64,000 nucleotides of DNA from Hydrolagus colliei. Lineage: Eukaryota. Below, one piece after another: positions 3,491 through 62,400 of the stretch (positions are counted from its first letter, which is position 1; every line of letters begins with the position of its first letter). A program made the translations under genes and the position numbers. The DNA lies in NCBI GenBank assembly GCA_035084275.1, contig CM068756.1, positions 14,198,001 through 14,262,000 on the forward strand, written 5' to 3'. The notes below the pieces were generated by a model that ran no database searches, was not told where the DNA came from, and was given only the letters and a program-made list of their open reading frames with translations.

Positions 3491-3829
3491 CTTGGAGGGT
3501 TCAGGAAATTGAGTTCATATTGTAAATGTAGTTTGTAATTCCACATAATCATTAAAGCTACATCAAGCTTCTGACGTAGAGGTGAGACGGCGACCAAATA
3601 ATCCAGCCTGAAACACAATATATGAGGCTCACATTGCTGTCCTCAGCAGCCTCATTTGAGCTATTTGGTTCATATTTTTAAATGAAATGGCTACACATTA
3701 TCAAAATACTCACTGAATGGATGCTATTCCAATGCAGATTAAATCTTAAAAATAGTTAAATGAGCTATGTTTGCTATATTTCAGCACTAGCTTCATACCA
3801 TAATATCGAAACAAACTCAAAGTGGGTAA

Positions 3830-5700: not shown

Positions 5701-5753
5701 TCACTCTGGAAAGGCGTCTGAAAGCGCTTGGCACGGTTGGTTGGCCACGGTAG
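5701..5753 (-). CDS. A1 putative terminal exon (A)TVANQPCQALSDAFPE*
   Basis: Strong acceptor ctcgtcttccgtctccag, in phase, locally GC-rich; alternative acceptors exist. Confidence 0.45.
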
Positions 5754-8700
5754 CTGGAGACGGAAGACGAGCCATCACATATGACTGTCTGATTTTATTT
5801 GTCTCTAACAGGGTATTAATTTATTCTCACACAAAATATTTACAGCTTGTATCTTCACTGTAAATATTTTCAATTTACCTTCAAGAATGTTCAGCCTCGT
5901 GGATGTAGAGCTTATTAACAGGGATATTAATGTCAACATTTATTATGATAACCCAGTAACAGTTTGGGAAGCTATCAGATGAACATATTGTTCACTAGTG
6001 TTCCAGACACCTGGAGGTTTGGAGGAGATATTTTTATATCCATTGATTATTAGAGAATCCTCCAATAAAACAAAGTGTAATTCCCACAATCTAAACTGTC
6101 TGCTCCCAGTTGCCGGCGAAACCGGCGTTTTCCTGTTGATTGATAATTTTATGGGCGACGCTATCAATACAATAATTGTCAATGAAATCACAATATTATT
6201 TTGAAGCGAAGAATGTCTTACCTTTCAAGTTGTGAGATTTTACATGGTCAACAATGAAGATGGTCAACACTATCACTACCAAGAAACAGAATATAAACCG
6301 TAAAATCATCATATTCTCCGACATTCCACCATAACCTAGAAAAGAAATATCGGAATTAAAATCTACTGAATAATTCTACTGTATTGGGAACATGTACAGT
6401 TTGTGAATTAATTTCTATTGGAAGGTACAATGAAGTGGACGAATATTATGAATTTGTGTGATTGAAAACAACAGAGAATTGTCAGGAACATGAACGCACA
6501 GACATGCTTTAGTGATGTTACAGAGACACACATATATTATGGGGTAGCCATTCCCCTGAGTCTGTGTGCTCAGCTTCAAATACACCGGAGAGAATGACTG
6601 TTCCGACCCGAGCCTTGGAGAGTTGGGCACCATTATAATCAAAACTGATTCCATTAGACATCTACTATCAAATAGAAAAGTCTGTAACACATCTCACAAA
6701 CTATTTAGATTTTAATCGCAGCGAGTGTTGCTATAAAGGGAAAAGAAGCAGAAGATTTTCCCCAACAAAGCCTCAGAATATTGAATATATTGATAAATGA
6801 TGTTATTTGTGCTTTATTTGTGAAAATGTATCAGTGGAAAAGTCCAGTTACTGGTTTCACCCCTAATTGCTGGTGGAGAGTGCAGGTCTATAGCACTTTG
6901 GGTGGGTTACCAAATAACAAGAAAATACATTTTGAAGGAGAGAGATATTTAGAAATTAATGAGAAAACAAGAAGATACACAGGTTTGAGATATTGCTTCG
7001 TTTCAAAGACTAAACATTTATAAAAACGCAATGTATGGCAGCTGCTGGAAATCTGAAAGAATCTGAAGATTCAGCAGGTCAGGCAGCCTCTCTGGACAAA
7101 GGAAAAGTGATTCAATGTTTTGGATTCACGACCTTTCGTCTGAACTGCGTTAATAACATTTTGACTGCGTTAATAACTCCGGAAAAGAGATCTGTGATTG
7201 ACTAACAACTGGGTTCCCACTTATTGCTGGGTAAACAGACGCCCAATGTTTCGTCCTGCCCGGGAATCAAATCCAGGTCCCCCCTCGAGAGAGGCGAGTG
7301 CTCTAATCACTGAGATACACGACTCCACTGATACAGGAGATTCTGATGAATAATAATCCTAAAAGTAGCCAATTTTCCACACACAGTCATGGCGTTAATA
7401 ACCAATTTCACCTGCTGTGTTTATCAGCCAGAACAAAGGGAGGAAGAATCTTACTTCACTTTTTGAATAGTACCATGGCCTCATTAACCTGAACAAGCCA
7501 CAAGGACCTCACTTCAATGTCCCATCCCAATAGCAGGAAGCCACAGACTGCTCCCCCAGCATTACACTTGATTGCCAGTGATTTGGGACAATATTGATCC
7601 ATGTGTTCGGAATAGATTAGTATATTAGACAGCGTAAACATTCTGCTTATGGTGCTATGGAGGGTTATAAATATTTGAAAGCCTTGTTAATTTTAGACAT
7701 TTATGCATATAACATATGAATACTATTTCATTGTTAAGCAAAGTAACCAATGTAAATATTGCATCTAATCTCAATCTGTGCCTTTTTTGTGATCAAAATT
7801 ACATCTGTAAAGCACATTTCACGATTAGATGGAACTCAGAACTGAATACAGCTGGATATGTATTAGTTTACGGCAGCTGTAGCTAATGACATCTGGTTAC
7901 CATTGCTCTTGACTTTATTACTCAGGCGAGGGCGACACACAGAATACCAAAATGGACCATTGCTTATCAGAGGAACCCTCACAAAATACAATCCATAGAT
8001 TGTAGAGCAAGAGACTGCTGTACCTATTGACAGCTGATCACAGCGATGAAACACAATCACTAGTTGTTAATAAAAGGGGGAACATGACGGGATGGGAAGA
8101 TGTTTGATGCTGAAGTGTCCTGAGGTGTCCCGAGCGTTTGAAAACTATGCGGGTTCAGGATGCCACCACTTATTGGTTAGGTTTATCAAAATGTTTGATT
8201 TATTCACTTAAAATGTTCCACATTCAAACAGTATAATGTATTTTATCACCATTTCGTACAATCTCCTGATCACCTTTCTCCTATTTGTCTCCTATCAACT
8301 CTGGCATCGCTTCCTATCCCTGCAGGTCTCCCGGGAGAGAGAGCAAGTCACATTCCATCCCTCAAGTCACAGGCAGGAGCTGCCAAACATTGACTTGTCC
8401 CTCGGCCTCTCTTCTTCACTGTCTGTAAGATCCCACTTGGCGACATTATCCGCAGAGTATGTCCACATGTATATACACGAACTCTCCCATGTTCCTCCAC
8501 ACTGAACATCCACCATTAACCCAATTAGTGCCAAACTTCAAGTCCTTTCTTGAGCTCTGACTTCCTTCAGCTGAATAATAATAATCTCTGGATTTCATAT
8601 AACACCTTATATATCGAGTAAAATTATGAAATTTGGTGCTATTATTATCATCTCATTATTGTCGTCTCAAATCACTTCAGACAGTTAATTGAAAGGCGCT

Positions 8701-11700
8701 ATACAAATGTAACTCAAAATCACCAGAAATGTGACCATACCTGCAGCACGTCCACCCCATAGTGAATAACGGGTTGGATTTTCAATCCCTGGAGAAATAG
8801 TACAAAACTGAGATGAGACTGTACATTGTGTAGGGGAATGCTTTGTATATTCGGTAGAATAGATATATTATGCAAGTCATTTATGATTTATACCTTGCAG
8901 TGATTTCGAGTAAGTATTAAGCACGGTAAATGGTTTAAATATGGTCTAATCTTAATCCGTGTTTATTGAAAGCTGAATAAAAATTACAAGCAGACCATCA
9001 TTGAAAACATTTTGATATTGACGTAGGGTGTTAGACAGGTGTTAGACAGATCAACATTTGTTCTCGCTTATTTTTATTATTGCTCTTAAATCGATCACAC
9101 TGAGGGAGACACTCAGAATACACATGAAGCGGAACATCGATTTTCAGAGGAACCCTCCCAAAATACAATCTATAAATTATAGAGTGAGACAACTGGACAT
9201 AGTGGCATCTGATCGCAGCGATGAAACATGCTGACTAGCTTTGAATAAAAGGAGGAACATGGTGGGATGGAAAGACATTTGATGAATCACGTGACCTGAG
9301 CTGAAGCTGAGGTTTTGAAAATCATTCAGTTTTACGATGTGTTGATAATATCTATAATCGATAAGTAGATAATATCGGTTTGGTTTAATGAAATGTTTGA
9401 TGATTCACATCAAATGTTCCACATTCCAACAGTGTAATGTATTTGATCAACATCTTGCACAACCCCCTCATCACTAATCTCAACACATTTGTCTCCTATC
9501 AACTCTGGCATCGCTTCCTATCCCCACAGGTCTCCCGGGAGAGCAAGTCACATTCCATCCCTCAAGTCACGGGCAGGAGCTGCTGAACATTGACTGTTCC
9601 TCGGGTCTCTATCCTCAGCCTCTGCCCTTCACTATCTAGATGTTCCCACTTGGCGACAAATCGCTTCAGAGGATTCAATGAAAGGCGTTGTACAAATACA
9701 ACTTTGTTGTTGATGTTGTTTACGAATCAATGCGGCTAAACATCCCTATGAGAATTGAATTAACAACAGTTGGGTTTTTAAAACTCTTTTAGAATCTTAC
9801 CTGCTTTAGGTTTTGAGATGGTGTAGGTGGCAATAGCTGAATTCTTGAGGGTGATGTGAGACACCAGACAGGTATAAACAGATACGCTCTGGACAGACTG
9901 TGTGTCTTCAATAGAGCTAGAGACCTTATAGAGTTCCCATGAGTTCTGCTTTTCTGTGGTTCCTGTCTCTTCCACCTTTATTCCTGATGTTGGTGTAATT
10001 TCATTCCCACCTTTATACCATATGAGGGTGAAATCCTTTGGGTAAAACGCAGTAGTTTCACACACAATTGTCCGATGCTTAGTTGAATTCCTAGAAAAAA
10101 TCCTCAGTGGAGTTGGGGGAACTGTAGAACAGATAATGGAGGAAAATCATATTAATTTTGATCAATCAGCGGGAGAAACTTTATTTTAATTCATTTCTTT
10201 GCAATCTCTCGATTCCTGAGTGCAAATGGAGGTTTCTTTAGATTCACAAATATCCCTCTCACAGCAGCAGAAGCTTCCTCCTGCTGTAATTACCCTTCGG
10301 TTTTTATCAATTAATGTTGATTCGTAATCGTTGTCTTGCATATTATTACTATTATTGTGACTAAGATTATTTGGCGGAATTGATCGCTGCAAACTCTCGA
10401 TCAGAGGAGACAGAGGATTCCTGACAGGTGTGAGAACACTGTGTTATTCTGGCTGAATTGGTAGCATTCTCGCATCTGAGTTAGAAGGATATGGGATCAA
10501 ACTTGACATCGGGACTTGGAATTCACACAGTCGATGTGGAAACATTTGCTGCAATGCCGTTCTTAGGGTGAGAAATTAAATATGGTTTAATTCAACCGGT
10601 TATGTTGAACATTAAAGATCTCATGGCAATATTCAAAAACAATTTCTCTGACAGCCTACCCTTCAAAGTTAAAAACATGACCATCCACCTCATGGCTGTT
10701 GTGGGACATTGCTGTGAATAATTTGGTGGCTGTGTTTTCTCATAAAGTACCTTGTCTCATCGTTTTCCAAAATTTGTGATGCTTTGGGAGGTTTCAGTGG
10801 CATGACAAGGTGCTGGAGCAAATGAAAGGATTGTATTATCTCAGCATTGAGAGATTTTGATCAGGTAAAGAGGGAAACAGTGAGTCTGTAACAAAAGTCC
10901 ATAAGTTAGAATCATTACCATGGAATAAAGGAAAGGTTGAATTGTGATGTTACTGAGAGGCGCTTGGGTCCAAAACAAAATAATGGCTGAAGCAGAATCC
11001 ATAAAGCTGTTAAAATGAATTTTACAGCCATTTCCTTTGTCTTCTACACAGATTTTGGATTATGTATTTGAATAATATGGATTGATTTTGCATGTAACCT
11101 TTGTAACATTAGAAGTTTGTGAAATTATTTGTTAATTGTTGTACGATTAGAGTTGCATTATTTTATGTTTCAGTTGGATAGGGGTTATTTTTAATGTAAT
11201 TTTCAAATATTTTCACTCTTCATCCACACTCACCGCACACAGTTAAGCTTGATCCAGGTCCTGTTCCAATTACTGATCCCTGATGGATCACTGAGCAGCG
11301 ATAGACTCCAGAGTCCTGGAAACTCACATTGAGGATCTGGAAGAAGCCGCTCCCTTTGCCTTTCACACCAAATGTTTTCCTGCTGTCCGCCTGTGTGTCC
11401 AAGTAGCCATCCTCACCCTCCTTCTCCCACTTCACCTCCTCTCCTGAACCATCTTGAGAGAAGGGAAAAATACAGCGGAAAGTGACGTTTGTCCCTCTGA
11501 TGGCAGCCACACGTTTGGGGATTTGTGTCACTTTCTCTGTAGAATCGCCAGCAACTGTCAGAAAATAAATTCAAAAGATTGATTTCACAGATAATATGCC
11601 GTGGACAAAAGCAAGCGAGTGAATAGACTAAAAAGTAAGTATATATGATAAATGGCACAAGGAAACAAGCTTGCAGATATTTCATAGAAGAACTGAGTTG

Positions 11701-11768
11701 TAGAATAATAAAATACCTGTTGAAATAATATGTAAGACGGACAGATACAGAAACACAACACTCCCCAT
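5701..11768 (-). CDS. Gene A1: leader-VJ-C1-(stalk)-Arg-TM-short tail, candidate activating receptor; 3' exon joining inferred
   Basis: Leader, V and C1 exons are intact paralogs of B1. The B-type TM exon is truncated. An in-phase Arg-bearing TM exon lies at 6335-6222. Confidence 0.72.
6222..6335 (-). CDS. A1 Arg-containing TM exon (G)YGGMSENMMILRFIFCFLVVIVLTIFIVDHVKSHNLK
   Basis: tttcttttctag acceptor, AAAG|GTAAGA donor, phase 1/1, 114 nt. Confidence 0.82.
8685..8788 (-). CDS. A1 truncated B-type TM exon (GIENPTRYSLWGGRAAGMVTFLVIL+SYICIAPFN*), or 48-nt stalk exon 8788-8741 via a new CAG|GTATGG donor
   Basis: Same acceptor as B1 exon 4. Homology stops after FLVI; the last 9 codons come from an antisense L2/SINE-tail sequence. 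Confidence 0.7.
9801..10121 (-). CDS. A1 C1-set exon
   Basis: 321 nt, FYPKDF..W, YTCLVSH, GT-AG. Confidence 0.95.
11234..11554 (-). CDS. A1 VJ-type V exon, ends SSLTVC
   Basis: 321 nt, Cys/Trp/DSGVYRC/GTGPGSSLTV motifs, GT-AG. Confidence 0.95.
11717..11768 (-). CDS. A1 signal-peptide exon MGSVVFLYLSVLHIIST
   Basis: 52 nt, phase-1 donor, paralog of B1 exon 1. Confidence 0.88.
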
Positions 11769-21011: not shown

Positions 21012-21176
21012 TTATGCGGCTCCTGACTCCGTGACAGTGACAGCTTTGTAGTTTCCGACATTTACCTCCGCATACTCTGAATTCTTGCCGCCGGGTTTAG
21101 CTTTTCCTGTTTTTTTGGAGTGAGGGAAATCCAGATCAGCGTAGGTCAGCTTGTCAGTGGCGGCTCCTTGCTTGGT
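21012..21176 (-). CDS. B1 exon 7 (terminal), ITIMs LTYADL and SEYAEV
   Basis: tgttttcag acceptor, phase 0; TKQGAATDKLTYADLDFPHSKKTGKAKPGGKNSEYAEVNVGNYKAVTVTESGAA*. Confidence 0.9.
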   Translation of the reverse strand, partial: TKQGAATDKLTYADLDFPHSKKTGKAKPGGKNSEYAEVNVGNYKAVTVTESGAA

Positions 21177-24100
21177 CTGAAAACAACAATGTTTGGGATT
21201 GTCTTTTTGTTGGTTCCATATATAGATTTACATAGAATGGTACAGGAACTGAGCAGCCGCTGTTTATACTTCACATTTCCTCCATTCTTACTTATTTTCT
21301 TCTATAAATCTCTATTCTTTTCTCCTCGTCTCCGCAACAAGGTTTATGTTATATTATTCCAAACTCATCACCCCATGGCCAATTGGTGAATGTATTTCAA
21401 ACTGAGATATGTAACTGTAGATTTAAGGCTCTAGATCTTAGCGATGAGCTGACAGCTGCTTTGGTTGGTGCAGATCAGTTAATCCTGGAATTCCCGATTG
21501 CTCTATGGGAACTTGAAATCTCAGGATGGCTGGGTCAGTATACACATGATCCTCGTTAATTTATTTGCTGAATTGTTAATTCATATCTAAAGATACAATC
21601 TTAGAATATTATGGCCCAGAAAGTAAGTTTGCTCATCGGACACGTGCTGTTAATTTGAAAGAATTATGTACAGAGTCCAATTTACCTGCCTTTTCTCCAA
21701 CACTCCTTAAAATTCATCTGTTTTTACATATCCCCATTATCTTCAGATGAAGGAATTATGTTGTTTCAACCCAGAAAGGCTGAACATATTCAAAAACCAA
21801 ATGCAGAATACAAATGAGGTATTTGAAGATTGGAGAAGGGGACAAAATCATAACGATCAAACCAATGAAGCCTATTTACCAAACCCGTTCAACATTTTTT
21901 ACATGTTGTTTACCTGGGCGTATACTGTCCTCTCCTCCTGTTGTTTAGTTCTTGGAGTTTTATTGGAACTTTTTAAATCCAATGCTACATAAGCCACGTT
22001 GTCACCCACTGCTCCCTCCCCCGTCTGTAAAACAAAGTATAGAGTTAAATGGTTGTTCAGTTTCCTTCCTAGGTCTGTGCTCTTTGACTATGGTATTGAT
22101 TAAGTAGGGATTTTAGGCGAAACAACGGCTACTGTTGAGTTCAAATATTAATAGCACATAACATCCAGTAAGTAGATCGAGATCTCTCCAGAAGCAGAGA
22201 AAATTATGTTTCCAATTGATTATTTGCCATCCACCAATACGAAAATATGTTGCAGAACTGATTAGATGAATTCAACAAGAATTCTCACTTCAAGTATTAT
22301 CTCTTAAAATATCCTGGGATTAGCCCTGTTGCTAGGCACAGGCCTGACACTGAAGGATTACTCAAAAGGTAAATTACTTGTTTATTGGAGTAACAATTTA
22401 ATCCTTTAAAGGGGAATAAATAGGTCTATTTATTCCTATTAAGGAAAGGTTGAAAGCTTTGCGTTCATTGTCCAATTAAACGTAAACTCTGTCTTGTTGG
22501 GGTGGGATGAGATTATTGTCTGTCTTGTCTTAAACTCTGTCTTGTTGGGGTGGGACGGTATGCTGGCGAATGATAATCAGAATAACTTGGCGATACACTT
22601 CATCATGGTTTATGGGACCATATTATGCGCAAATTGGTTGTAGCAAATAGAGTCGCTACAAAGACAAGGATTAGAAGCATTTTAAGATGATTGGAATTAT
22701 AGGATCCACATTGATAATGAGTAAATTGCTCCATTGGTCACCCAAACTCTTTGGTGAAAAACTTATAATAGTAATAATAATCCTTGCTTTTGATATAGCA
22801 CTTTTCACATCTTCTCGGCATCTCAAAGCGCTCCATGGGAATATACTGCAAAGTGAATTGACTGTATTGCAAACAGCAGTGTCCCACAAACAGTTGTGGA
22901 TTAAAATCACCAATTTTTAGAAACATACCCGTTCTTCAAGATTGCCCGATTGAGTCAGGTTTCCCTTTGATCCTAAATGTGAATAAAATTTACTGAATTA
23001 AATATTTACCCAATTTTAATGTTAACAATAAAATCATGTAATTATCCTACATTTTGCGATGAGTGAAATCCAAATATTCTCCTGCATTATTTACCCTCCA
23101 ACTTAATCTGCATGTCACTCATACTTTCTTAAATCCTTAACACTGTGGGACTCTTTCCGTTGAATATTTAAAATCTGAAACTTGGCGATGGCTAACCACT
23201 ATTCCTCAATTCTTAAGAAACTTGGTTGTTTCCTGCAAGCTGAGCCTTGGTTTCTCTCCTGGGACTTTCAATAACAAAAATATATTTTTAATGTACCAAT
23301 TTCAATGTAATACATTGCTGAATTCCGTTAAACAATAACAAATAACATGTGTAAAGTGCCTTTCACGTCGGGAGGTTGTTTACTGATAAACATACACCTG
23401 GCGCTAATCCCTGCATTTGTTTGAGACCATTCGTCAGTACAGTTACTTAGAAATGCACAGAATTCATCCTATTATAAGGCAGTTGCAATATTGTATATTG
23501 AATCAGATTTCTGACATTGGATGTTGGAAAAGGAGAAATTCTGGGAAACTAACAGTCACCTTGTGAAATTGTTACAGGAATGAATCTGTTGTAATAACTA
23601 CAAGTAATTGATGTGCAATCACAGCGTCACAGAACTCTACTATCATGGAAATAAGAATCAAGTCACTTTGTCTCTTTGCTAATAACCATTGGTGCTTTCA
23701 ATGGTTTTATATCAAGGTGTAATGTTTACAATTAATTGCAATGAAATCAGAATTTTCTTACTCTTTTTCTTCTTTAATTGGCATTGCTTCCCAATTATGA
23801 TCGAAATCACCAGAAATGCGACCACACCCGCAGCACATCCACCCCATAGTGAATAACGGGTTGGATTTTCAATCCCTGGAGAAATAGTATTCACTGAGGT
23901 GAGACTGTACGTTGTGTAGGGGAATGCTTTATAAATTTGGTAGAATAGATATGTTATGCAAGTCATTTATGATTTATACCTTGCAGTGATTTCGAGTAAG
24001 TATTAAGCACGGTAAATTGTTTAAATATGGTCTAATCTTAATCCGTGTTTATTGAAAGAGGAATAAAAATTAGAAGGAGACCATCATTGAAAACATTTTG

Positions 24101-40045: not shown

Positions 40046-43000
40046 TCACTCTGGAAAGGCGTCTGAAAGCGCTTGGCACGGTTGGTTGGCCACGGTAGCT
40101 GGAGACGGAAGTCGAGCCATCACATATGACTGATTTTATTTGTCTCTAACACGGTATTAATTTATTCTCACACAAAATATTTACAGCTTGTATCTTCACT
40201 GTAAATATTTTCAATTTACCTTCAAGAATGTTCAGCCTCGTGGATGTAGAGCTTATTAACAGGGATATTAATGTCAACATTTATTATGATAACCCAGTAA
40301 CAGTTTGGGAAGCTACCAGATGAACATATTGTTCACTAGTGTTCCAGACACCTGGAGGTTTGGAGGAGATATTTTTATATCCATTGATTATTAGAGAATC
40401 CTCCAATAAAACAAAGTGTAATTCCCACAATCTAAACTGTCTGCTCCCAGTTGCCGGCGAAACCGGCGTTTTCCTGTTGATTGATAATTTTATGGGCGAC
40501 GCTATCAATACAATAATTGTCAATGAAATCACAATATTATTTTGAAGCGAAGAATGTCTTACCTTTCAAGTTGTGAGATTTTACATGGTCAACAATGAAG
40601 ATGGTCAACACTATCACTACCAAGAAACAGAATATAAACCGTAAAATCATCATATTCTCCGACATTCCACCATAACCTAGAAAAGAAATATCGGAATTAA
40701 AATCTACTGAATAATTCTACTGTATTGGGAACATGTACAGTTTGTGAATTAATTTCTATTGGAAGGTACAATGAAGTGGACGAATATTATGAATTTGTGT
40801 GATTGAAAACAACAGAGAATTGTCAGGAACATGAACGCACAGACATGCTTTAGTGATGTTACAGAGACACACATATATTATGGGGTAGCCATTCCCCTGA
40901 GTCTGTGTGCTCAGCTTCAAATACACCGGAGAGAATGACTGTTCCGACCCGAGCCTTGGAGAGTTGGGCACCATTATAATCAAAACTGATTCCATTAGAC
41001 ATCTACTATCAAATAGAAAAGTCTGTAACACATCTCACAAACTATTTAGATTTTAATCGCAGCGAGTGTTGCTATAAAGGGAAAAGAAGCAGAAGATTTT
41101 CCCCAACAAAGCCTCAGAATATTGAATATATTGATAAATGATGTTATTTGTGCTTTATTTGTGAAAATGTATCAGTGGAAAAGTCCAGTTACTGGTTTCA
41201 CCCCTAATTGCTGGTGGAGAGTGCAGGTCTATAGCACTTTGGGTGGGTTACCAAATAACAAGAAAATACATTTTGAAGGAGAGAGATATTTAGAAATTAA
41301 TGAGAAAACAAGAAGATACACAGGTTTGAGATATTGCTTCGTTTCAAAGACTAAACATTTATAAAAACGCAATGTATGGCAGCTGCTGGAAATCTGAAAG
41401 AATCTGAAGATTCAGCAGGTCAGGCAGCCTCTCTGGACAAAGGAAAAGTGATTCAATGTTTTGGATTCACGACCTTTCGTCTGAACTGCGTTAATAACAT
41501 TTTGACTGCGTTAATAACTCCGGAAAAGAGATCTGTGATTGACTAACAACTGGGTTCCCACTTATTGCTGGGTAAACAGACGCCCAATGTTTCGTCCTGC
41601 CCGGGAATCAAATCCAGGTCCCCCCTCGAGAGAGGCGAGTGCTCTAATCACTGAGATACACGACTCCACTGATACAGGAGATTCTGATGAATAATAATCC
41701 TAAAAGTAGCCAATTTTCCACACACAGTCATGGCGTTAATAACCAATTTCACCTGCTGTGTTTATCAGCCAGAACAAAGGGAGGAAGAATCTTACTTCAC
41801 TTTTTGAATAGTACCATGGCCTCATTAACCTGAACAAGCCACAAGGACCTCACTTCAATGTCCCATCCCAATAGCAGGAAGCCACAGACTGCTCCCCCAG
41901 CATTACACTTGATTGCCAGTGATTTGGGACAATATTGATCCATGTGTTCGGAATAGATTAGTATATTAGACAGCGTAAACATTCTGCTTATGGTGCTATG
42001 GAGGGTTATAAATATTTGAAAGCCTTGTTAATTTTAGACATTTATGCATATAACATATGAATACTATTTCATTGTTAAGCAAAGTAACCAATGTAAATAT
42101 TGCATCTAATCTCAATCTGTGCCTTTTTTGTGATCAAAATTACATCTGTAAAGCACATTTCACGATTAGATGGAACTCAGAACTGAATACAGCTGGATAT
42201 GTATTAGTTTACGGCAGCTGTAGCTAATGACATCTGGTTACCATTGCTCTTGACTTTATTACTCAGGCGAGGGCGACACACAGAATACCAAAATGGACCA
42301 TTGCTTATCAGAGGAACCCTCACAAAATACAATCCATAGATTGTAGAGCAAGAGACTGCTGTACCTATTGACAGCTGATCACAGCGATGAAACACAATCA
42401 CTAGTTGTTAATAAAAGGGGGAACATGACGGGATGGGAAGATGTTTGATGCTGAAGTGTCCTGAGGTGTCCCGAGCGTTTGAAAACTATGCGGGTTCAGG
42501 ATGCCACCACTTATTGGTTAGGTTTATCAAAATGTTTGATTTATTCACTTAAAATGTTCCACATTCAAACAGTATAATGTATTTTATCACCATTTCGTAC
42601 AATCTCCTGATCACCTTTCTCCTATTTGTCTCCTATCAACTCTGGCATCGCTTCCTATCCCTGCAGGTCTCCCGGGAGAGAGAGCAAGTCACATTCCATC
42701 CCTCAAGTCACAGGCAGGAGCTGCCAAACATTGACTTGTCCCTCGGCCTCTCTTCTTCACTGTCTGTAAGATCCCACTTGGCGACATTATCCGCAGAGTA
42801 TGTCCACATGTATATACACGAACTCTCCCATGTTCCTCCACACTGAACATCCACCATTAACCCAATTAGTGCCAAACTTCAAGTCCTTTATTGAGCTCTG
42901 ACTTCCTTCAGATGAATAATAATAATCTCTGGATTTCATATAACACCTTATATATCGAGTAAAATTATGAAATTTGGTGCTATTATTATCATCTCATTAT

Positions 43001-45982
43001 TGTCGTCTCAAATCGCTTCAGACAGTTAATTGAAAGGCGCTATACAAATGTAACTCAAAATCACCAGAAATGTGACCATACCTGCAGCACATCCACCCCA
43101 TAGTGAATAACGGGTTGGATTTTCAATCCCTGGAGAAATAGTACAAAATTGAGATGAGACTGTACATTGTGTAGGGGAATGCTTTGTATATTCGGTAGAA
43201 TAGATATGTTATGCAAGTCATTTATAATTTATACCTTGCAGTGATTTCGAGTAAGTATTAAGCACGGTAAATGGTTTAAATATGGTCTAATCTTAATCTG
43301 TGTTTATTGAAAGAGGAATAAAAATTACAAGGAGACCATCATTGAAAACATTTTGATATTGACGTAGGGTTAGACAGGTGTTAGACAGATCAACATTTGT
43401 TCTCGCTTATTTTTATTATTGCTCTTAAATCGATCACACTGAGGGCGACACTCAGAAGACACATGAAGCGGAACATCGATCTTCAGAGGAACCCTCACAA
43501 AATACAATCTATAAATTATAGAGTGAGACAACTGGACATAGTGGCATCTGATTGCAGTGAGGAAACATGCTGACTAGCTTTGAATAAAAGGAGGAACATG
43601 GTGGGATGGAAAGACATTTGATGAATCACGTGACCTGAGCTGAAACTGAGGTTTTGAAAATCATTCAGTTTTAGGATGTGTTCATAATATCCTCAATCGA
43701 TAAGTAGATAATATCGGTTTGGTTTCAATAAAATGTTTGATGATTCACATCAAATGTTCCACATTCTAACAGTGTAATGTATTTGATCAACATCTTGCAC
43801 AACCCCCTCATCACTAATCTCAACACATTTGTCTCCTATCAACTCTGGCATCGCTTCCTATCCCCACAGGTCTCCCGGGAGAGCAAGTCACATTCCATCC
43901 CTCAAGTCACAGGCAGGAGCTGCTGAACATTGACTGTTCCTCGGGTCTCTATCCTCAGCCTCTGCCCTTCACTATCTAGATGTTCCCACTTGGCGACAAA
44001 TCGCTTCAGAGGATTCAATGAAAGGCGTTGTACAAATACAACTTTGTTGTTGATGTTGTTTACGAATCAATGCGGCTAAACATCCCTATGAGAATTGAAT
44101 TAACAACAGTTGGGTTTTTAAAACTCTTTTAGAATCTTACCTGCTTTAGGTTTTGAGATGGTGTAGGTGGCAATAGCTGAATTCTTGAGGGTGATGTGAG
44201 ACACCAGACAGGTATAAACAGATACGCTCTGGACAGACTGTGTGTCTTCAATAGAGCTAGAGACCATATAGAGTTCCAATGAGTCCTTCTTTTCTATGGT
44301 TACTGTCTCTTCCACCATTATTCCTGATGTTGGTGTAACTTCGTTCTCATCTTTATACCATATGAGGGTGAAATCCTTTGGGTAAAACGCAGTAGTTTCA
44401 CACACAATTGTCCGATGCTTAGTTGAATTCCGAGAGAAAATCCTCAGTAGAGTTGGGGGAACTGTAGAACAGATAATGGAGGAAAATCATATTAATTTTG
44501 ATCAATCAGCGGGAGAAACTTTATTTTAATTCATTTCTTTGCAATCTCTCGATTCCTGAGTGCAAATGGAGGTTTATTTAGATTCACAAATATCCCTCTC
44601 ACAGCAGCAGAAGCTTCCTCCTGCTGAAATTACACTTCGGTTTTTATCAATTAATGTTGATGCGTAATCGTTGTCTTACATATTATTACTATTATTGTTA
44701 TTGTGACTAAGATTATCAGGCGGAATTGATCACTGTGAACTCTCGATCAGAGGAGACAGAGGATTCCTGACAGGTGTGAGAACACTGTGTTATTCTGGCT
44801 CAATTGGTAGCATTCTCGCATCTGAATTAGAAGGATATGGGATCAAACTTGACATCGGGACTTGGAATTCACACAGTTGATGTGGAAACATTTGCTGCAA
44901 TGCCGTTCTTAGGGTGAGAAATTAAATATGGTTTAATTCAACCGGTTATGTTGAACATTAAAGATCTCATGGCAATATTCAAAAACAATTTCTCTGACAG
45001 CCTACCCTTCAAAGTTAAAAACATGACCATCCACCTCATGGCTGTTGTGGGACATTGCTGTGAATAATTTGGCGGCTGTGTTTTCTTTCTTTTTTCTCAT
45101 AAAGTACCTAGTTTCATCGTTTTCCAAAATTTGTGATGCTTTGGGAGGTTTCAGTGGCATGACAAGGTGCTGGAGCAAATGAAAGGATTGTATTATCTCA
45201 GCATTGAGAGATCCATAAAGCTGTTAAAATGAATTTTACAGCCATTTCCTTTGTCTTCTACACAGATTTTGGATTACGTATTTGAATAATATGGATTGAT
45301 TTTGCATGTAACCTTTGTAACATTAGAAGTTTGTGAAATTATTTGTTAATTGTTGTACTATTAGAGTTGCATTATTTTATGTTTCAGTTGGATAGGGGTT
45401 ATTTTTAATGTAATTTTCAAATATTTTCACTCTTCATCCACACTCACCGCACACAGTTAAGCTTGATCCAGGACCTGTTCCAATCACTGATCCCTGACGG
45501 ATCACTGAGCAGCGATAGACTCCAGAGTCCTGGAAACTCACATTGAGGATCTGGATGAAGCCGCTCCCTTTGCCTTTCACACCAAATGTTTTCCTGCTGT
45601 CCGCCTGTGTGTCCAAGTAGCCATCCTCACCCTCCTTCTCCCACTTCACCTCCTCTCCTGAACCATCTTGAGAGAAGGGAAAAATACAGCGGAAAGTGAC
45701 GTTTGTCCCTCTGATGGCAGCCACACGTTTGGGGATTTGTGTCACTTTCTCTGTAGAATCGCCAGCAACTGTCAGAAAATAAATTCAAAAGATTGATTTC
45801 ACAGATAATATGCCGTGGACAAAAGCAAGCGAGTGAATAGACTAAAAAGTAAGTATATATGATAAATGGCACAAGGAAACAAGCTTGCAGATATTTCATA
45901 GAAGAACTGAGTTGTAGAATAATAAAATACCTGTTGAAATAATATGTAAGACGGACAGATACAGAAACACAACACTCCCCAT
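40046..45982 (-). CDS. Gene A2: duplicate of A1
   Basis: Leader 45982-45931, V 45768-45448, C1 44461-44141, truncated TM/stalk 43129-43026 (donor at 43082), Arg-TM 40676-40563, terminal 40098-40046; all open. Confidence 0.72.
40563..40676 (-). CDS. A2 Arg-TM exon
   Basis: Same translation as the A1 Arg-TM exon, splice sites intact. Confidence 0.82.
44141..44461 (-). CDS. A2 C1 exon
   Basis: 321 nt, open, GT-AG. Confidence 0.95.
45448..45768 (-). CDS. A2 V exon
   Basis: 321 nt; differs from A1 V at 4 nt by my reading (F>I, H>R, 2 silent). Confidence 0.95.
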
Positions 45983-54960: not shown

Positions 54961-57900
54961 TTATGCGGCTCCTGACTCCGTGACAGTGACAGCTTTGTAG
55001 TTTCCGACATTTACCTCCGCATACTCTGAATTCTTGCCGCCGGGTTTAGCTTTTCCTGTTTTTTTGGAGCGAGGGAAATCCAGATCAGCGTAGGTCAGCT
55101 TGTCAGTGGCGGCTCCTCGCTTGGTCTGAAAACAACAATGTTTGGGATTGTCTTTTTGTTGGTTCCATGTATAGATTTACATAGAATGGTACAGGAACTG
55201 AGCAGCTGCTGTTTATACTTCACATTTCCTCCATTCTTACTTATTTTCTTCTATAAATCTCTATTCTTTTCTCCTCGTCTCCGCAACAAGGTTTATGTTA
55301 TATTATTCCAAACTCATCACCCCATGGCCAATTGGTGAATGTATTTCAAACTGAGATATGTAACTGTAGATTTAAGGCTCTAGATCTTAGCGATGAGCTG
55401 ACAGCTGCTTTGGTTGGTGCAGATCAGTTAATCCTGGAATTCCCGATTGCTCTATGGGAATTTGAAATCTCAGGATGGCTGGGTCAGTATACACATGATC
55501 CTCGTTAATTTATTTGCTGAATTGTTAATTCATATCTAAAGATACAATCTTAGAATATTATGGCCCAGAAAGTAAGTTTGCTCATCGGACACGTGCTGTT
55601 AATTTGAAAGAATTATGTATAGAGTCCCATTTACCTGCCTTTTCTCCAACACTCCTTAAAATTCATCTGTTTTTACATATCCCCATTATCTTCAGATAAA
55701 GGAATTATGTTGTTTCAACGCAGAAAGGCTGAAGATATTCAAAAACCAAATGCAGAATACAAATGAGGTAGAAGATTGGAGTTGGGGACAAAATCATAAC
55801 GATCAAACCAATGAAGCCTATTTACCAAACCCGTTCAACATTTTTTACATGTTGTTTACCTGGGCGTATACTGTCCTCTCCTCCTGTTGTTTAGGTCTTG
55901 GAGTTTTATTGGAACTTTTTAAATCCAATGCTACATAAGCCACGTTGTCACCCACTGCTCCCTCCCCCGTCTGTAAAACAAAGTATAGAGTTAAATAGTT
56001 GTTCAGTTTCCTTCCTAGGTCTGTGCTCTTTGACTATGGTATTGATTAAGTAGGGATTTTAGGGGAAACAACGGCTACTGTTGAGTTCAAATATTAATGG
56101 CACATAACATCCAGTAAGTAGATCGAGATCTCTCCAGGAGCAGAGAAAATTATTGTTTCCAATTGATACTTTGCCATCCACCAATACGAAAATATGTTGC
56201 AGAACTGATTAGATGAATTCAACAAGAATTCTCACTTCAAGTATTATCTCTTAAAATATCCTGGGATTAGCCCTGTTGCTAGGCACAGGCCTGACACTGA
56301 AGGATTACTCAAAAGGTAAATTACTTGTTTATTGGAGTAACAATTTAATCCTTTAAAGGGGAATAAATAGGTCTATTTATTCCTATTAAGGAAAGGTTGA
56401 AAGCTTTGCGTTCATTGTCGAATTAAACGTAAACTCTGTCTTCTTGGGGTGGGATGAGATTATTGTCTGTCTTGTCTTAAACTCTGTCTTGTTGGGGTGG
56501 GATGGTATGCTGGCGAATGATAATCAGAATAACTTGGCGATACACTTCATCGTGGTTTATGGGACCATATTATGCGCAAATTGGTTGTAGCAAATAGAGT
56601 CGCTACAAAGGCAAGGATTAGAAGCATTTTAAGATGATTGGAATTATAGGATCCACATTGATAATGATTAAATTGCTCCATTGGTCACCCAAACTCTTTG
56701 GTGAAAAACTTATAATAGTAATAATAATCCTTGCTTTTGATATAGCGCTTTTCACATCTTCTCGGCATCTCAAAGCGCTCCATGGGAATATACTGCAAAG
56801 TGAATTGACTGTATTGCAAACAGCAGTGTCCCACAAACAGTTGTGGATTAAAATCACCAATTTTTAAAAACATACCCGTTCTTCAAGATTGCCCGATTGA
56901 GTCAGGTTTCCCTTTGATCCTAAATGTGAATAAAATTTACTGAATTAAATATTTACCCAATTTTAATGTTAACAATAAAATCATGTAATTATCCTACATT
57001 TTGGGATGAGTGAAATCCAAATATTCTCCTGCATTATTTACCCTCCACCTGAATCTGCATGTCACTCATACTTTCTTAAATCCTTAACACTGTGGGACTC
57101 TTTCCGTTGAATATTGAAAATCTGAAACTTGGCGATGGCTAACACTATTCCTCAATTCTTAAGAAACTTGGTTGTTTCCTGCAAGCTGAGCCTTGGTTTC
57201 TCTCCTGGGACTCTCAATAATAAAAATATATTTTTAATGTACCAATTTCAATGTAATACATTGCTGAATTCCGTTAAAAAATAACAAATAACATGTGTAA
57301 AGCGCCTTTCACGTCGGGAGGTTGTTTACTGATAAACATACACCTGGCGCTAATCCCTGCATTTGTTTGAGACCATTCGTCAGTACAGTTACTTACAAAT
57401 GCACATAATTCATCCAATTATAAGGCAGTTGCAATATTGTATATTGAATCAGATTTCTGACATTGGATGTTGGAAAAGGAGCAATTCTGGGAAACTAACA
57501 TTCACCTTGTGAAATTGTTCCAGGAATGAATCTGTTGTAATAACTACAAGTAATTGATGTTGTATAATCACAGCGTCACAGAACTCTACTATCATGGAAA
57601 TAAGAATCAAGTCACTTTGTCTCTTTGCTAATAACCATTGGTGCTTTCGATGGTTTTATATCAAGTTGTAATGTTTACAATTAATTGCAATGAAATCAGA
57701 ATTTTCTTACTGTTTTTCTTCTTTAATTGGCAACGCTTCCCAATTATGATGAAAATCACCAGAAATGCGACCACACCCGCAGCACATCCACCCCATAGTG
57801 AATAACGGGTTGGATTTTCAATCCCTGGAGAAATAGTATTCACTGAGGTGAGACTGTACATTGTGTAGGGGAATGCTTTATAAATTTGGTAGAATAGATA

Positions 57901-59476: not shown

Positions 59477-62400
59477 CTGAATGGATGCTATTCCAATGCA
59501 GATAAAAGCTTAAAAATAGTTAAATGAGCTATGTTTGCTATATTTCAGCACTAGCTTCATACCATAATATCGAAACAAACTCAAAGTGGGTAAGGCCAAG
59601 CCACATGTTGGATTGTCTTCAAGGACAATATTGAGCCAAAATAGAGGAAGAGTAATGTCACTTTATAAATCATTGGTGCCACCTCACTTGGAATATTGTG
59701 TGCAGTTCTGTTCACCAGAATACGATAACAATATTGCATTGATTGAGAGGATATAGAGTAAGGCAACCAAATTATTCGAGGCGATTATTTGGACTACAAG
59801 GAGTGATTTGGTTTACTGGGCATGTTCACGCTGGAGACGGGAAGGTTGAGGTGCAATATGATTACGGTCTTTAAGGTTCTGAAGGGTTTCTGTAATATAG
59901 ACCACGATAAGCTGTATATTTTACAATGAAGAGAATAACCAGATGTCAATGATTGAAGCTGGTGGGGAGAGGAGGTAAATTCACAACAGGTCAACAGAAA
60001 TGTTACTTCACTGAGCGAACAGTAAACTTATGAAACAGGCTCCCTAAGGAGATGATGACAGCAGAAACTAGTTTGTTTCAAGAAGAATTTGTGCGAGAAA
60101 AAACAACATTGGGATAAAGGTTTGAGTTTGGGACTTGTGTCAATGGACTGCTAGGTTTGTGGAAGGCAAACTAGATGTACATTGGTCTTCTTTCACTTAA
60201 CAAATCTTTATGATGTTAAGTTGTTGTTTGAGTTGTTGCTGTTACTGCTATTATAGATAAATCATAAAATATATCTAAAAATATGTCTGAATGAAAAGAT
60301 TGGATGTGTTTAATAGATTTCTGCAAGTTCTAGATATTGCTTTGCCCTGGAGCACAGATAATCAATGATTGACGAAAATACCACATTGACCTTCATGGAA
60401 CATTTTATTTATTGCAATTGAAAATGTTGAATCAAAGCTGTTCTGTTCAATTATCATGTACTATACAAGCAACTTCATTTGAGATTTTAGATGAATGGTA
60501 TTACAGATATCACACAAAAATAAAACAAAACCTTTATGTCACAGCCGACATTATTACAATACATCAATATCTGTATTTTAACACAACAAAATGTATCATT
60601 TATGAGACTTGGTTATTTTTGAAATTACGTTTTAATTTTAAACAGTTGAATAATGTGACTTGTTTAAGTAGTTCTAGTGAAATAATGTAAAGGGAAGATA
60701 GATTGAAGAGTAAACGCCTTCTGAATCTTTTTGTGCAGAAAGCTCTGTGGATACATAGATGTGTTAAAACCATCAACATAATGTTCAGCAGCGATCAGAA
60801 AAATCAAAACATGATCTACAGTTGTTGTTCATGATATGTCCCGAAATATTATTTATTAAACACTAAAGTGGTGGCGTTAGGTAATATAATATTTGTAATT
60901 GTCGGTTTATTGGTGCAAACTTGTCCAAGCTGATGTGTAATATTTTGACCTGGGTGTGTGAAGAAACTCTGTGAAACTACAACAAGAACAACAAAATTAC
61001 ATTTGTATAGCGCCTTTCACATCGGGAGAACGTCCCGAGACGCTGGGATAAAGAACTGAGAATATATAAAGGGTGAAACAAATAAGATACGGCTAATATT
61101 TCAGTTATATTCCCATTCCTCAATGGTATCAGTCGAATATCTCAAATATGTTTAATGTAATATACCAGTTCATAACGTACAATCTTCTGTTTCATCAGTC
61201 ACTGCATTTCCACCAGCATAATTCAATCGCCTGTGATGATTTCTCACTTCATCTGTAAGTCAACAAGCAGAGCCAGTGTGAGTGTGAGCCAGTATCACCA
61301 ATCGTTTGACTCTATGATTAATTGTACTGATTGCTGGTTTCCACGCAAAGAGATTGAAGTTTGAATCTGAAACGTTTATAACGACACTGTAAACATAATA
61401 TATTTTAATTTAATTGTAAACAGTGACTAAAGGTATTCAGACAACACCATTGACATTGATAACCCGCCGATCACTTTAGAAAGGCGTCTGAAAGCGCTTG
61501 GCACGGTTGGTTGACCACGGTAGCTGGAGACGGAAGACGAGCCATCACATATGACTGTCTGATTTTATTTGTCTCTAACAGGGTATTAATTTATTCTCAC
61601 ACAAAATATTTACAGCTTGTATCTTCACTGTAAATATTTTCAATTTACCTTCAAGAATGTTCAGCCTCGTGGATGTAGAGCTTATTAACAGGGATATTAA
61701 TGTCAACATTTATTATGATAACCCAGTAACAGTTTGAGAAGCTATCAGATGAACATATTGTTCACTAGTGTTCCAGACACCTGAAGGTTTGGAGGAGATA
61801 TCTTTATATCAATGGATTATTAGAGAATCCTCCAATAAAACAAAGTGTAATTCCCACAATCTAAACAGTCTGGTCCCGGTTGCCGGTGGTTTCCTGTTGA
61901 TAGATAATTTTATGGGCGACGCTATCAATACAATAATTGTCAATGAAACCACAATATTATTTTGAAAAAAAGAACGCCTTACCTTTCAAGCTGTGAGATT
62001 TTAACATGGTCAACAATGAAGATGGTCAACACGATCACTACCAAGAAACAGAATATAAACCGTAAAATCATCATGTTCTCCGACATTCCACCATAATATC
62101 CATTCCTCCCAGAAGCTAGAAAACAAATATCGGAATTAAAATCTATTGAATAATTAGACTGTGTTGGGAATATGTACAGTTTGTGAATTAATTTATTTTG
62201 GAAGGTACAATGAGGTGGACGAATATTATGAATTTGTGTGATTGAAAACAACAGAGAACATGAATGTACAGATATGCTTCAGTAATACGATAGAGACACA
62301 CTTATATATTATGGGATAGCCATTCCCCTGAGAATGTGTGCTCAGCTTCAAATACACCAGAGAGAATGGCTGTTCCAACCCGAGCCTTGGAGAGTTGAGC

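What the first reader, a model, noticed from the sequence alone, without database searches (positions are those of the whole stretch)
8685..8788. An inhibitory-type TM exon apparently converted into a stalk exon by gain of a splice donor
B reads GCG|GGT GTG GTC, while both A copies read GCA G|GT ATG G. Two substitutions create CAG|GTATGG. This gives a 48-nt phase-1/1 exon (GIENPTRYSLWGG[R/C]AA) that joins C1 in frame to the downstream Arg-TM exon and removes the hydrophobic span. The rest of the exon is broken by TE sequence. This would be a two-base switch from inhibitory to activating signalling. Read-through would instead give a tailless hydrophobic C-terminus (..FLVILSYICIAPFN*), possibly GPI-like. 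The same holds at 43129-43082.
Basis: partly seen in the sequence, partly recalled or inferred. Interest (0 to 1): 0.75.

Follow-up and report, generated by a model that had tools for sequence, protein, structure and literature searches.

The report
Truncated membrane exon, possible stalk mini-exon
In a chimaera-like cluster of paired immune receptors, two gene copies keep the first 75 bases of an inhibitory-type membrane exon, and a new in-frame splice donor could turn 48 of them into extra stalk, but their activating character comes from a rearrangement and an ancient arginine-bearing membrane exon, not from the two base changes.

Summary
The sequence observation is correct. On the minus strand, A1 (8741-8788) and A2 (43082-43129) read GCTGCAG|GTATGG, where B1 and B2 read GCTGCGG|GTGTGG. 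The 48-nt segment is phase 1/1. Homology to B stops 27 nt later, at 8714.

The window holds SIRP-like V-C1 receptor genes; the closest relatives are in Callorhinchus milii. B genes are inhibitory, with an uncharged TM exon and two ITIM exons. A genes have no ITIM exons. They carry an Arg-TM exon (6222-6335) that is conserved in Callorhinchus and in eight elasmobranch proteins.

The outgroup shows that the donor changes are derived G>A transitions, one at a CpG. They strengthen a GT that was already there.

- C1 joins Arg-TM in frame without the mini-exon, and every annotated relative does exactly that.
- The truncation and the missing ITIM exons, not the two bases, removed inhibitory signalling.
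- The sequence at the break starts with a retroposon tail motif but is not a clean insertion.

Whether the mini-exon is spliced in cannot be decided here, because no transcripts were reachable. My verdict is a plausible optional stalk cassette in an ordinary activating member of a paired-receptor family.

The parts
8741..8788 (-). A1 48-nt candidate mini-exon, the first 48 nt of a B-type TM exon. It encodes (G)IENPTRYSLWGGRAA(G) and is phase 1/1.
   Evidence: The acceptor tttctccag is at 8797-8789 and is identical to the acceptor of the working B TM exon.
8735..8743 (-). A1 candidate splice donor CAG|GTATGG. The derived G>A changes are at 8742 (position -2, a CpG) and 8738 (position +3). A third derived G>A, at 8732, lies outside the donor consensus.
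   Evidence: polarised with Callorhinchus L001; score 4.6, against 2.2 in B.
8714..8740 (-). The next 27 nt of the TM exon still homologous to B (GMVTFLVIL...). Homology to B ends at 8714.
8685..8713 (-). Read-through tail up to the stop codon (8687-8685). On the plus strand, 8691-8712 is the retroposon tail motif GAAAGGCGCTATACAAATGTAA.
   Evidence: One search finds the motif 8 times in the window against 0 expected. One search shows the motif is the 3' end of the window's LINE/SINE-type elements.
7730..8713 (+). A copy, 72-74% identical, of the retroposon-bearing sequence that also lies in the C1-TM intron of this gene family. It has no (TTG)n tail and abuts the truncated exon.
   Evidence: 7928-8445 matches 9102-9658, E 5e-99; 8686-7904 matches Callorhinchus intron L001 11547-12334, E 1e-66.
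6222..6335 (-). A1 Arg-TM exon: (G)YGGMSENMMILRFIFCFLVVIVLTIFIVDHVKSHNLK. A GTAAG donor follows at 6221. Read-through gives a stop at 6198-6196. A 1-nt deletion relative to A3 and Callorhinchus changes the short tail.
   Evidence: tblastn with Heptranchias P0035 gives E 4e-7, and with Mustelus P0039 E 2e-6.
9801..10121 (-). A1 C1-set exon, with an intact ORF and a phase-1 donor, GCA G|gtaaga.
   Evidence: (Pfam C1-set, E 3e-11).
11234..11554 (-). A1 V-set exon with a J-like GTGPGSSLTV motif.
11717..11768 (-). A1 leader exon, MGSVVFLYLSVLHIIST.
43082..43129 (-). A2 copy of the 48-nt candidate mini-exon (Cys where A1 has Arg), with the same donor.
40563..40676 (-). A2 Arg-TM exon.
23762..23875 (-). 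B1 complete inhibitory-type TM exon (114 nt): GIENPTRYSLWGGCAAGVVAFLVISIIIGKQCQLKKKK.
21914..22027 (-). B1 cytoplasmic exon carrying VAYVAL and TVYAQ tyrosine motifs (ITIM-like).
   Evidence: 79% identical to Callorhinchus P0014, E 8e-15.
21015..21179 (-). B1 last cytoplasmic exon carrying LTYADL and SEYAEV motifs.
   Evidence: E 2e-15 to P0014.
57711..57824 (-). B2 complete TM exon.
61979..62115 (-). Third Arg-TM exon (A3): SGRNGYYGGMSENMMILRFIFCFLVVIVLTIFIVDHVKISQLER*. It keeps the ancestral frame and the TAA stop. Its V-C1 part lies beyond the window end.
   Evidence: E 3.5e-8 to P0035.

Best explanation
The window holds a tandemly duplicated cluster of SIRP-like V-C1 immune receptor genes from a chimaera-like fish, all on the minus strand. 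B genes are inhibitory: V, C1, an uncharged TM exon and two exons with ITIM-type tyrosine motifs. A genes are the activating partners: V, C1 and then an ancient exon encoding a membrane span with an arginine near its outer end and a very short tail.

The flagged segment is a leftover. It is the first 75 nt of a B-type TM exon. It sits in A's C1-to-Arg-TM intron inside a tract that is nearly identical to B, and it is cut off where it meets a mosaic of intron-derived and retroposon sequence.

The original acceptor is intact. Two derived G>A transitions have upgraded a pre-existing in-frame GT to CAG|GTATGG. The first 48 nt can therefore plausibly be spliced in as a cassette that adds 16 residues (IENPTRYSLWGG[R/C]AAG) to the stalk. 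Skipping it gives the family's standard C1-Arg-TM protein. Both products are in frame and both are activating-type.

Shown here: the sequence facts, phases, polarity of the substitutions, conservation of the Arg-TM exon, absence of ITIM exons in A, and direct C1-Arg-TM joins in relatives.

Inferred: that the mini-exon is included at least some of the time, and that the arginine recruits an ITAM adaptor. The second inference rests on general knowledge of paired receptors.
For: - Family and domains: V-set and C1-set; best hits are Callorhinchus 'SIRP/SHPS-1-like' proteins, 60% identity.
- Gene maps.
- Donor difference and break at 8714.
- Polarity: Callorhinchus has G at all three A-specific sites.
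- Donor score: 4.6 bits in A, 2.2 in B and about -0.4 in Callorhinchus; real donors in these genes score 1.2-7.0.
- Arg-TM exon: conserved at about 85% nucleotide identity within flanks of about 73% identity in Callorhinchus L001 758-862 and L003 23919-24029. It also matches the tails of eight elasmobranch proteins.
- No ITIM exon between 8714 and 6335.
- AATAAA signals lie 250-400 nt after the Arg-TM stop.
- The A V and C1 exons are intact ORFs.
Against: - No transcript evidence of any kind was reachable.
- None of eight annotated Arg-TM relatives has a segment between C1 and the Arg-TM exon, so inclusion would be lineage-specific.
- A 48-nt internal exon is near the size at which exons are often skipped.
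- The substitutions show no clear excess over local divergence, and one of the three clustered changes is irrelevant to the donor.
- A1 and A2 carry a 1-nt deletion that changes the tail after the Arg-TM span. This could mean relaxed constraint on these two copies.
Confidence: 0.45

Rival explanations
1. Pure pseudo-exon. The 75-nt remnant is never spliced in. A transcripts join C1 directly to the Arg-TM exon, as in all annotated relatives. The GTATGG donor is a by-product of neutral decay, including a CpG transition, in a dead piece of coding sequence.
For: Direct C1-Arg-TM joins occur in P0018, P0022, P0027, P0035, P0039, P0040, P0041 and P0043, and the catshark exon map confirms one of them. 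C1->Arg-TM is in frame without the mini-exon. The exon is short. Two of the three clustered G>A changes are at CpG sites, and the third has no role in the donor. The local patch is simply more diverged, at about 8%.
Against: The acceptor is the unchanged, constitutively used acceptor of the B TM exon. The donor is the best GT in the region and scores within the range of real donors here. An intact strong acceptor with a usable donor 48 nt downstream is hard for the spliceosome to ignore completely.
Confidence: 0.33
2. Two substitutions converted an inhibitory TM exon into a constitutive stalk exon, and by doing so switched the gene from inhibitory to activating signalling.
For: The two changes are derived and both improve the donor. 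The frame is kept. The hydrophobic span would be removed.
Against: The exon is truncated at nt 75, and its 3' half is absent from the A locus. No ITIM exons follow it. The Arg-TM exon predates the holocephalan-elasmobranch split. Reverting the two bases would therefore not restore an inhibitory receptor, and the activating form does not need the mini-exon.
Confidence: 0.07
3. The A genes mainly produce truncated products, or are decaying. One route is read-through of the remnant, giving a tail-less hydrophobic C-terminus (...FLVILSYICIAPFN*). The other is read-through of the C1 donor, giving a secreted V-C1 protein ending KAGKILKEF*.
For: The closest Callorhinchus models (P0001 and the 235-aa product in L004) and P0011 all end by reading through the C1 donor. 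A1 and A2 have a frame-changing 1-nt deletion after the Arg-TM span. The read-through ORF of the remnant is open to 8685.
Against: The V, C1 and Arg-TM exons, and all their splice sites, are intact in both A copies. The first AATAAA after the remnant's stop is about 480 nt away. The spacing for a GPI signal looks poor, with only about two residues between any small omega+2 residue and the hydrophobic tail (my own reading, not a predictor).
Confidence: 0.15

Closest known systems
Cartilaginous-fish 'SIRP / SHPS-1-like' V-C1 receptors, known only as automatic annotations (for example Callorhinchus LOC103185896 = P0014, and Scyliorhinus P0018 and P0022)
   Same: The architecture is the same: leader, a V-set domain with a J-like motif, then one C1-set domain. 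There is then either an uncharged TM with ITIM exons or an Arg-TM exon with a short tail. Protein identity is 60%. Non-coding identity to the Callorhinchus locus is 70-80%, and gene order is colinear.
   Different: The window's A genes carry an extra truncated TM-exon remnant, with a usable donor, between C1 and Arg-TM. No annotated relative shows such a segment.
Mammalian SIRP-alpha / SIRP-beta paired receptors
   Same: These are paired inhibitory (ITIM) and activating (charged TM residue, short tail) forms with near-identical ectodomains, clustered in tandem. The ectodomains use V-set and C1-set domains with a J-like motif.
   Different: Mammalian SIRPs have V-C1-C1, whereas these genes have one C1. 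SIRP-beta uses a lysine and DAP12, whereas here an arginine lies near the outer end of the span. Orthology and ligand are unknown.
Birth of activating KIR / Ly49 / LILR / PILR receptors from inhibitory homologues (general knowledge, for example Abi-Rached and Parham 2005)
   Same: Activating members arise repeatedly from inhibitory ones through small structural changes, gene conversion and exon shuffling inside tandem clusters. The mosaic A/B tracts seen here fit that pattern.
   Different: In those cases the switch usually comes from a point mutation that places a charge in the same TM exon, plus a premature stop. Here the charged span is a separate, very old exon, and the inhibitory TM exon is left as a truncated remnant.
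Exonisation or rescue of cryptic exons by gain of a 5' splice site (general phenomenon)
   Same: A pre-existing weak GT next to an intact acceptor is strengthened by point mutations, giving a short in-frame cassette.
   Different: Use of the site is unproven here. The exon is a remnant of a former coding exon, not of a TE or an intron.

Membership tests
SIRP-like V-C1 paired Ig receptors of cartilaginous fish | An N-terminal V-set domain with a J-like G-x-G motif, followed by a C1-set domain. | tested here: met
   Pfam finds V-set (E 2e-9 and 9e-9) and C1-set (E 1e-10 and 3e-11) in the B1 and A1 models. The motif GTGPGS(S/R)LTV is present.
SIRP-like V-C1 paired Ig receptors of cartilaginous fish | Sequence homology and locus colinearity with annotated family members. 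| tested here: met
   (E 3.5e-72, 60% identity to the Callorhinchus protein). (colinear with Callorhinchus L001 across leader, V, C1, TM and both cytoplasmic exons).
Inhibitory member (B genes) | An uncharged TM and cytoplasmic ITIM/ITSM tyrosine motifs. | tested here: met
   TM is AAGVVAFLVISIII. The motifs VAYVAL, TVYAQT, LTYADL and SEYAEV lie at 21914-22027 and 21015-21179.
Activating member (A genes) | A basic residue inside the TM span, a short cytoplasmic tail and no ITIM. | tested here: met
   The Arg-TM exon encodes MMILRFIFCFLVVIVLTIFIV, followed by 10-17 residues. No ITIM exon lies in 240-8714.
Activating member (A genes) | Association with an ITAM adaptor (FcR-gamma or DAP12) and an activating signal. 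| not testable with these tools
   This needs co-expression or co-immunoprecipitation.
True SIRP orthologue (mammalian type) | Three Ig domains (V-C1-C1) and CD47 binding. | tested here: not met
   There is only one C1 exon per gene. Ligand binding was not tested.
Functional cassette (stalk) exon | An acceptor, a donor and preserved reading frame. | tested here: met
Functional cassette (stalk) exon | Presence in transcripts. | not testable with these tools
   No transcriptome of this species is in the protein or contig collections. The best hit to either model is 60% identical.
Functional cassette (stalk) exon | A homologous segment in related activating proteins. | tested here: not met
   Eight Arg-TM proteins from seven species join C1 directly to the Arg-TM exon. 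The catshark locus has no TM remnant in that intron.
Exon broken by a simple retroposon insertion | The TE terminus lies at the break. | tested here: met
   The 22-nt tail motif ends 1-2 nt from the break.
Exon broken by a simple retroposon insertion | A microsatellite tail, a target-site duplication, and the rest of the exon on the far side of the element. | tested here: not met
   There is no (TTG)n tail, unlike the other copies. No remainder of the TM exon is found anywhere downstream in A. The far side is a patchwork of pieces that elsewhere lie in family introns.
GPI-anchored read-through form | An omega site with small residues, a 5-10 residue spacer and a C-terminal hydrophobic tail. 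| not testable with these tools
   No GPI predictor was available. By eye the hydrophobic tail is present, but the spacer is too short.

The most novel reading that the evidence does not exclude
After a rearrangement dropped a truncated inhibitory TM exon, with a live acceptor, into the intron of an activating receptor gene, selection fixed two G>A changes. These made an in-frame donor and turned a splice hazard into a 16-residue stalk extension, with an unpaired cysteine in A2 and an arginine in A1. That extension changes the reach or the dimerisation of the activating receptor. This would be a documented case of a membrane-span exon being re-used as ectodomain stalk.
Probability: 0.2. Interest if true: 0.5.

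Novelty: new member of a known kind. Interest (0 to 1): 0.3.

Why it matters
If the mini-exon is used, it would be a clear small-scale example of how tandem immune-receptor clusters recycle exon fragments, and of how a splice-site gain can neutralise the damage done by a rearrangement.

The comparison also shows something broader. In cartilaginous fishes, the activating partner of this receptor family uses a separate Arg-bearing membrane exon that has been conserved since before chimaeras and sharks split. It appears repeatedly between or after inhibitory genes. That makes the family useful for studying how paired receptors are built.

None of this changes current understanding of paired receptors. 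The specific claim of a 'two-base signalling switch' does not hold.

Tried and rejected
1. I first read the roughly 1 kb after the break as A's own older C1-TM intron, followed by a decayed second TM exon (CNAGGAVCGFLLLG... at about 7470-7640). I rejected the decayed exon. A TM-exon DNA profile finds nothing there (nhmmer). The best tblastn hit has E 0.13. The stretch 7690-7364 is instead homologous to V-C1 introns of Callorhinchus paralogues.

2. A three-way site-pattern count (A-post, window intron, Callorhinchus intron) gave a near-star tree. It therefore cannot decide between an independent retroposon insertion and intron paralogy.

3. I suspected that catshark isoform P0016 uses an internal donor in its TM exon at the homologous position. 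I rejected this, because its tail (GGNWSTRRKP...) is a repeated, TE-derived sequence.

4. A protein search restricted to the Arg-TM tail found nothing. A 30-residue match cannot reach significance in a database of 5.8 billion sequences.

5. Look-ups of P0001, P0005, P0016 and P0018 found no record.

6. tRNA and Rfam scans of the break region gave nothing useful.

7. One literature search found no description of this family.

8. MaxEntScan and SpliceAI are not available. I used a simple position-weight score with frequencies recalled from the literature, so the numbers are only indicative.


Full report
**What the window is.** The window is eukaryotic, about 40% GC, and rich in LINE, LTR and SINE-like sequence. 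It contains a 34.3-kb tandem duplication at about 98% identity (240-24126 matches 34552-58075). Stop-to-stop ORFs on the minus strand give Ig exons. Pfam calls these V-set and C1-set. A model of gene B1 finds its best relatives in the elephant shark Callorhinchus milii (60% identity, E 3.5e-72). Sharks and rays come next. All hits are automatically named 'tyrosine-protein phosphatase non-receptor type substrate 1-like / SIRP-beta-like'. The source is therefore most likely a chimaera related to, but not identical with, Callorhinchus. Non-coding identity to the Callorhinchus locus is 68-82%.

**Gene map (minus strand).**
- A1: leader 11717-11768, V 11234-11554, C1 9801-10121, the flagged segment 8741-8788, and an Arg-TM exon 6222-6335.
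- A2: the same structure at +34341.
- B1: leader near 26133-26183, V 25638-25957, C1 24908-25228, a complete TM exon 23762-23875, and two cytoplasmic exons with VAYVAL/TVYAQT and LTYADL/SEYAEV motifs at 21914-22027 and 21015-21179.
- B2 (57.7-59.5 kb): the same TM exon, but a 5'-truncated V exon.
- A third Arg-TM exon lies at 61979-62115. Its V-C1 part is beyond the window end.

**The observation.** The A copies read GCT GCA G|GT ATG GTC ACA. The B copies read GCT GCG G|GT GTG GTC GCA. The acceptor and the first 45 nt are otherwise identical, apart from one C/T difference that gives Arg in A1 and Cys in A2 and B. The C1 donor is phase 1 and the segment is 48 nt. The Arg-TM acceptor is phase 1 (ag|GT TAT GGT...). 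The join therefore reads ...SKPKA-G-IENPTRYSLWGG[R/C]AA-G-YGGMSENMMILRF.... Read-through gives ...GMVTFLVILSYICIAPFN*. Homology to B stops at 8714, which is 27 nt past the donor.

**Polarity and strength of the donor.** The orthologous Callorhinchus TM exon (L001 12619-12723) reads GCA GCG GGT GGT TTC GCA. It has G at all three A-specific positions. The A states at 8742, 8738 and 8732 are therefore derived G>A transitions, and 8742 and 8732 are at CpG sites. The GT itself is old: B has CGG|GTGTGG at the same place. On a simple position-weight score, using vertebrate frequencies recalled from the literature, the A site scores 4.6 bits, the B site 2.2 and the Callorhinchus site about -0.4. The real donors of these genes score 1.2-7.0. 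The A site is the best GT in the remnant. The next best GT, at 8724, would break the frame.

**Is there a signal of selection?** Only 8 of 1726 aligned sites are A-derived across the whole A/B tract, and three of them fall within 11 nt. That looks striking. However, the last 150 nt before the break form a patch with 12 fixed A/B differences (8%), split 6 A-derived, 5 B-derived and 1 unpolarised. The rest of the tract is a mosaic that recent gene conversion has kept at about 2%. Three differences in 11 nt of an 8% patch is not significant. One of the three has nothing to do with the donor.

**The Arg-TM exon is real and ancient.** Callorhinchus has it at L001 758-862 (DSSPMFNNMMIFRFILCFLVVIVLTVFIVDHIRIKPLER*) and at L003 23919-24029. 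It shares the phase-1 acceptor and the TAA stop formed by the GGTAAG that follows. The exon is more conserved than its flanks. Eight annotated elasmobranch proteins end in the same module: Scyliorhinus P0018 and P0022, Heptranchias P0027 and P0035, Mustelus P0039, Carcharodon P0040, Chiloscyllium P0041 and Cetorhinus P0043. An example is ...IMIVRLLLAFLVILALTGIIVDHVKISSIEG.... tblastn back to the window gives E 3.5e-8. The arginine lies near the outer end of the span. From general knowledge of paired receptors, that position suggests pairing with an ITAM adaptor. This is an inference.

**What the relatives say about a stalk exon.** In all eight proteins the C1 domain runs straight into the Arg-TM exon. 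The distance from exon start to the arginine is 10-12 residues, as in the chimaera exon, so there is no room for an extra 16 residues. For P0022 I mapped the exons on the catshark genome (L005). C1 lies at 13349-13645 and Arg-TM at 14960-15070, with contiguous protein coordinates, followed by a small tail exon. No TM-exon remnant is detectable in the 1.3-kb intron. In the window, C1->Arg-TM is also in frame without the 48 nt. The mini-exon is therefore neither required nor ancestral.

**What lies beyond the break.** On the plus strand, 8691-8712 is GAAAGGCGCTATACAAATGTAA. This motif occurs 8 times in the window against 0 expected. It is the 3' end of the local LINE/SINE-type retroposons, where a (TTG)n tail normally follows it. 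In that literal sense, 'TE sequence' is right. Four facts argue against a plain insertion:
- The copy at the break has no (TTG)n tail.
- There is no target-site duplication.
- The remaining 39 nt of the TM exon and its downstream intron are nowhere in the A locus.
- The roughly 1 kb that follows (8713-7730) is 72-74% identical to one specific element, in the same orientation. That element sits in the C1-TM intron of this family in the window (9102-9722, with a proper TTG tail) and in Callorhinchus (L001 11547-12334). It occurs nowhere else in 64 kb plus 130 kb of related loci.

Further on, 7690-7364 resembles V-C1 introns of Callorhinchus paralogues, and 7023-6412 is the conserved lead-in to the Arg-TM exon. 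In Callorhinchus gene P0006 that lead-in lies only 140 nt after C1. The interval is thus a patchwork of family-derived intron pieces. I could not decide between an insertion followed by a deletion and a recombination or template-switch junction between paralogues.

**Consequence for the interpretation.** The inhibitory character of the ancestral exon was lost through three structural facts. The exon is truncated at nt 75. No ITIM exon lies between it and the Arg-TM exon. The gene ends in the old activating module. Putting the two bases back to G would not recreate an inhibitory receptor. At most, the two changes determine how the leftover acceptor is handled: a clean 48-nt in-frame cassette, as opposed to skipping, a frame-breaking cryptic donor or read-through. 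That role is real but modest, and it remains unproven.

**Likelihoods.**
- Remnant that is at least partly included as an optional stalk cassette: about 0.45.
- Remnant that is always skipped: about 0.33.
- Truncated or secreted products, or decay of A1 and A2: about 0.15. The closest Callorhinchus models end by reading through the C1 donor, and A1 and A2 have a 1-nt deletion that alters the tail after the Arg-TM span.

**Novelty.** Paired activating and inhibitory Ig receptors, and the repeated birth of activating forms inside tandem clusters through gene conversion and exon shuffling, are well known. This is a new, unannotated member of that kind in a chimaera, with a possible exon-rescue event attached. 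I rate the interest as modest.

Noticed in passing
window 240-24126 vs 34552-58075; third partial unit 57752-64000: There is a 34.3-kb tandem duplication at about 98% identity, each unit carrying one A and one B gene. A third, older unit (about 94%) begins at the window end. The array therefore has at least three units of different ages.
   Followed up: partly
window 59139-59519 (B2 V exon) joined to 59477-63256: B2's V exon is truncated at its 5' end. It is fused directly to the region that elsewhere lies downstream of an Arg-TM exon. Relative to unit I, a deletion has removed the leader, half of V and about 12 kb. B2 is probably a pseudogene or part of a chimeric transcript unit.
   Followed up: partly
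window 9914-10063 and 44255-44404 (middle of the C1 exons): The C1 exons of A1 and A2 differ at 14 of 318 nt, 11 of them non-synonymous, although their flanks are 99.8% identical. At many of these sites A2 equals B1. This indicates patchy gene conversion between A and B, concentrated in one surface stretch of C1, with pN about equal to or above pS.
   Followed up: partly
window 6222-6240 / 40563-40581 vs 61979-61997; L001 840-865; L003 24010-24035: A1 and A2 share a 1-nt deletion just after the Arg-TM span. It replaces the conserved tail ...VDHVKISQLER* with ...VDHVKSHNLK(GKTFFASK*) and shifts the phase of the conserved GTAAG donor. In sharks that donor is used to reach a small tail exon (GK[DG]RLxIS...). 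I could not find such an exon in the window.
   Followed up: partly
L003 23919-24029, L001 758-862, L004 12796-13380: In Callorhinchus, Arg-TM exons lie about 7 kb downstream of a complete inhibitory gene (L003) and upstream of the next gene (L001). In gene P0006, the lead-in to an Arg-TM exon sits inside the C1-TM intron with the exon itself missing. This hints that some genes of the family could make both inhibitory and activating forms by alternative splicing.
   Followed up: partly
window 3287-3391, 17224-17340, 37629-37733, 51471-51596 (minus strand): Isolated fragments of V exons (for example ICLVTGNFSVEITRSPDCLMATRGTNITFHCIV...) lie between the genes. A similar fragment lies at Callorhinchus L001 7671-7745, in the same relative position.
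   Followed up: no
window 9781-9800 (after the C1 donor); Callorhinchus P0001, P0011: Reading through the C1 donor gives ...KPKAGKILKEF*. The closest Callorhinchus gene models end in the same way (KAGKVLKDF*, KGNLPIS*). This suggests that secreted V-C1 isoforms may be a regular product of the family.
   Followed up: no
window 27490-31087 (minus) and 28162-29244, 31243-32034 (plus): A large LTR-retrotransposon pol/gag ORF (639 aa plus a 227-aa RT/RNase H piece) is interrupted by a LINE fragment that ends with the GAAAGGCGCTATATAAATGTAA-(TTG)n tail. A second LINE reverse-transcriptase fragment follows. This block separates A2 from B1.
   Followed up: no
window 58075-58206: B2's C1-TM intron differs from B1's by a rearrangement that brings in another retroposon tail (..AAAGGCGCTCTATAAATGTAAATTGTTGTT..). 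It is younger than the roughly 2-3% divergence of the 34-kb duplication, so this retroposon family was active recently.
   Followed up: no
window 19934-20005 (minus): ARAGORN calls a tRNA-Ala (TGC). It could be a genuine tRNA gene or the head of a tRNA-derived SINE.
   Followed up: no
window 16411-17184 and 50579-51431: Long proline- and serine-rich low-complexity ORFs occur on both strands (PPPPS.. and GGGGE..). This is a GC-rich simple-repeat block, not a gene.
   Followed up: no
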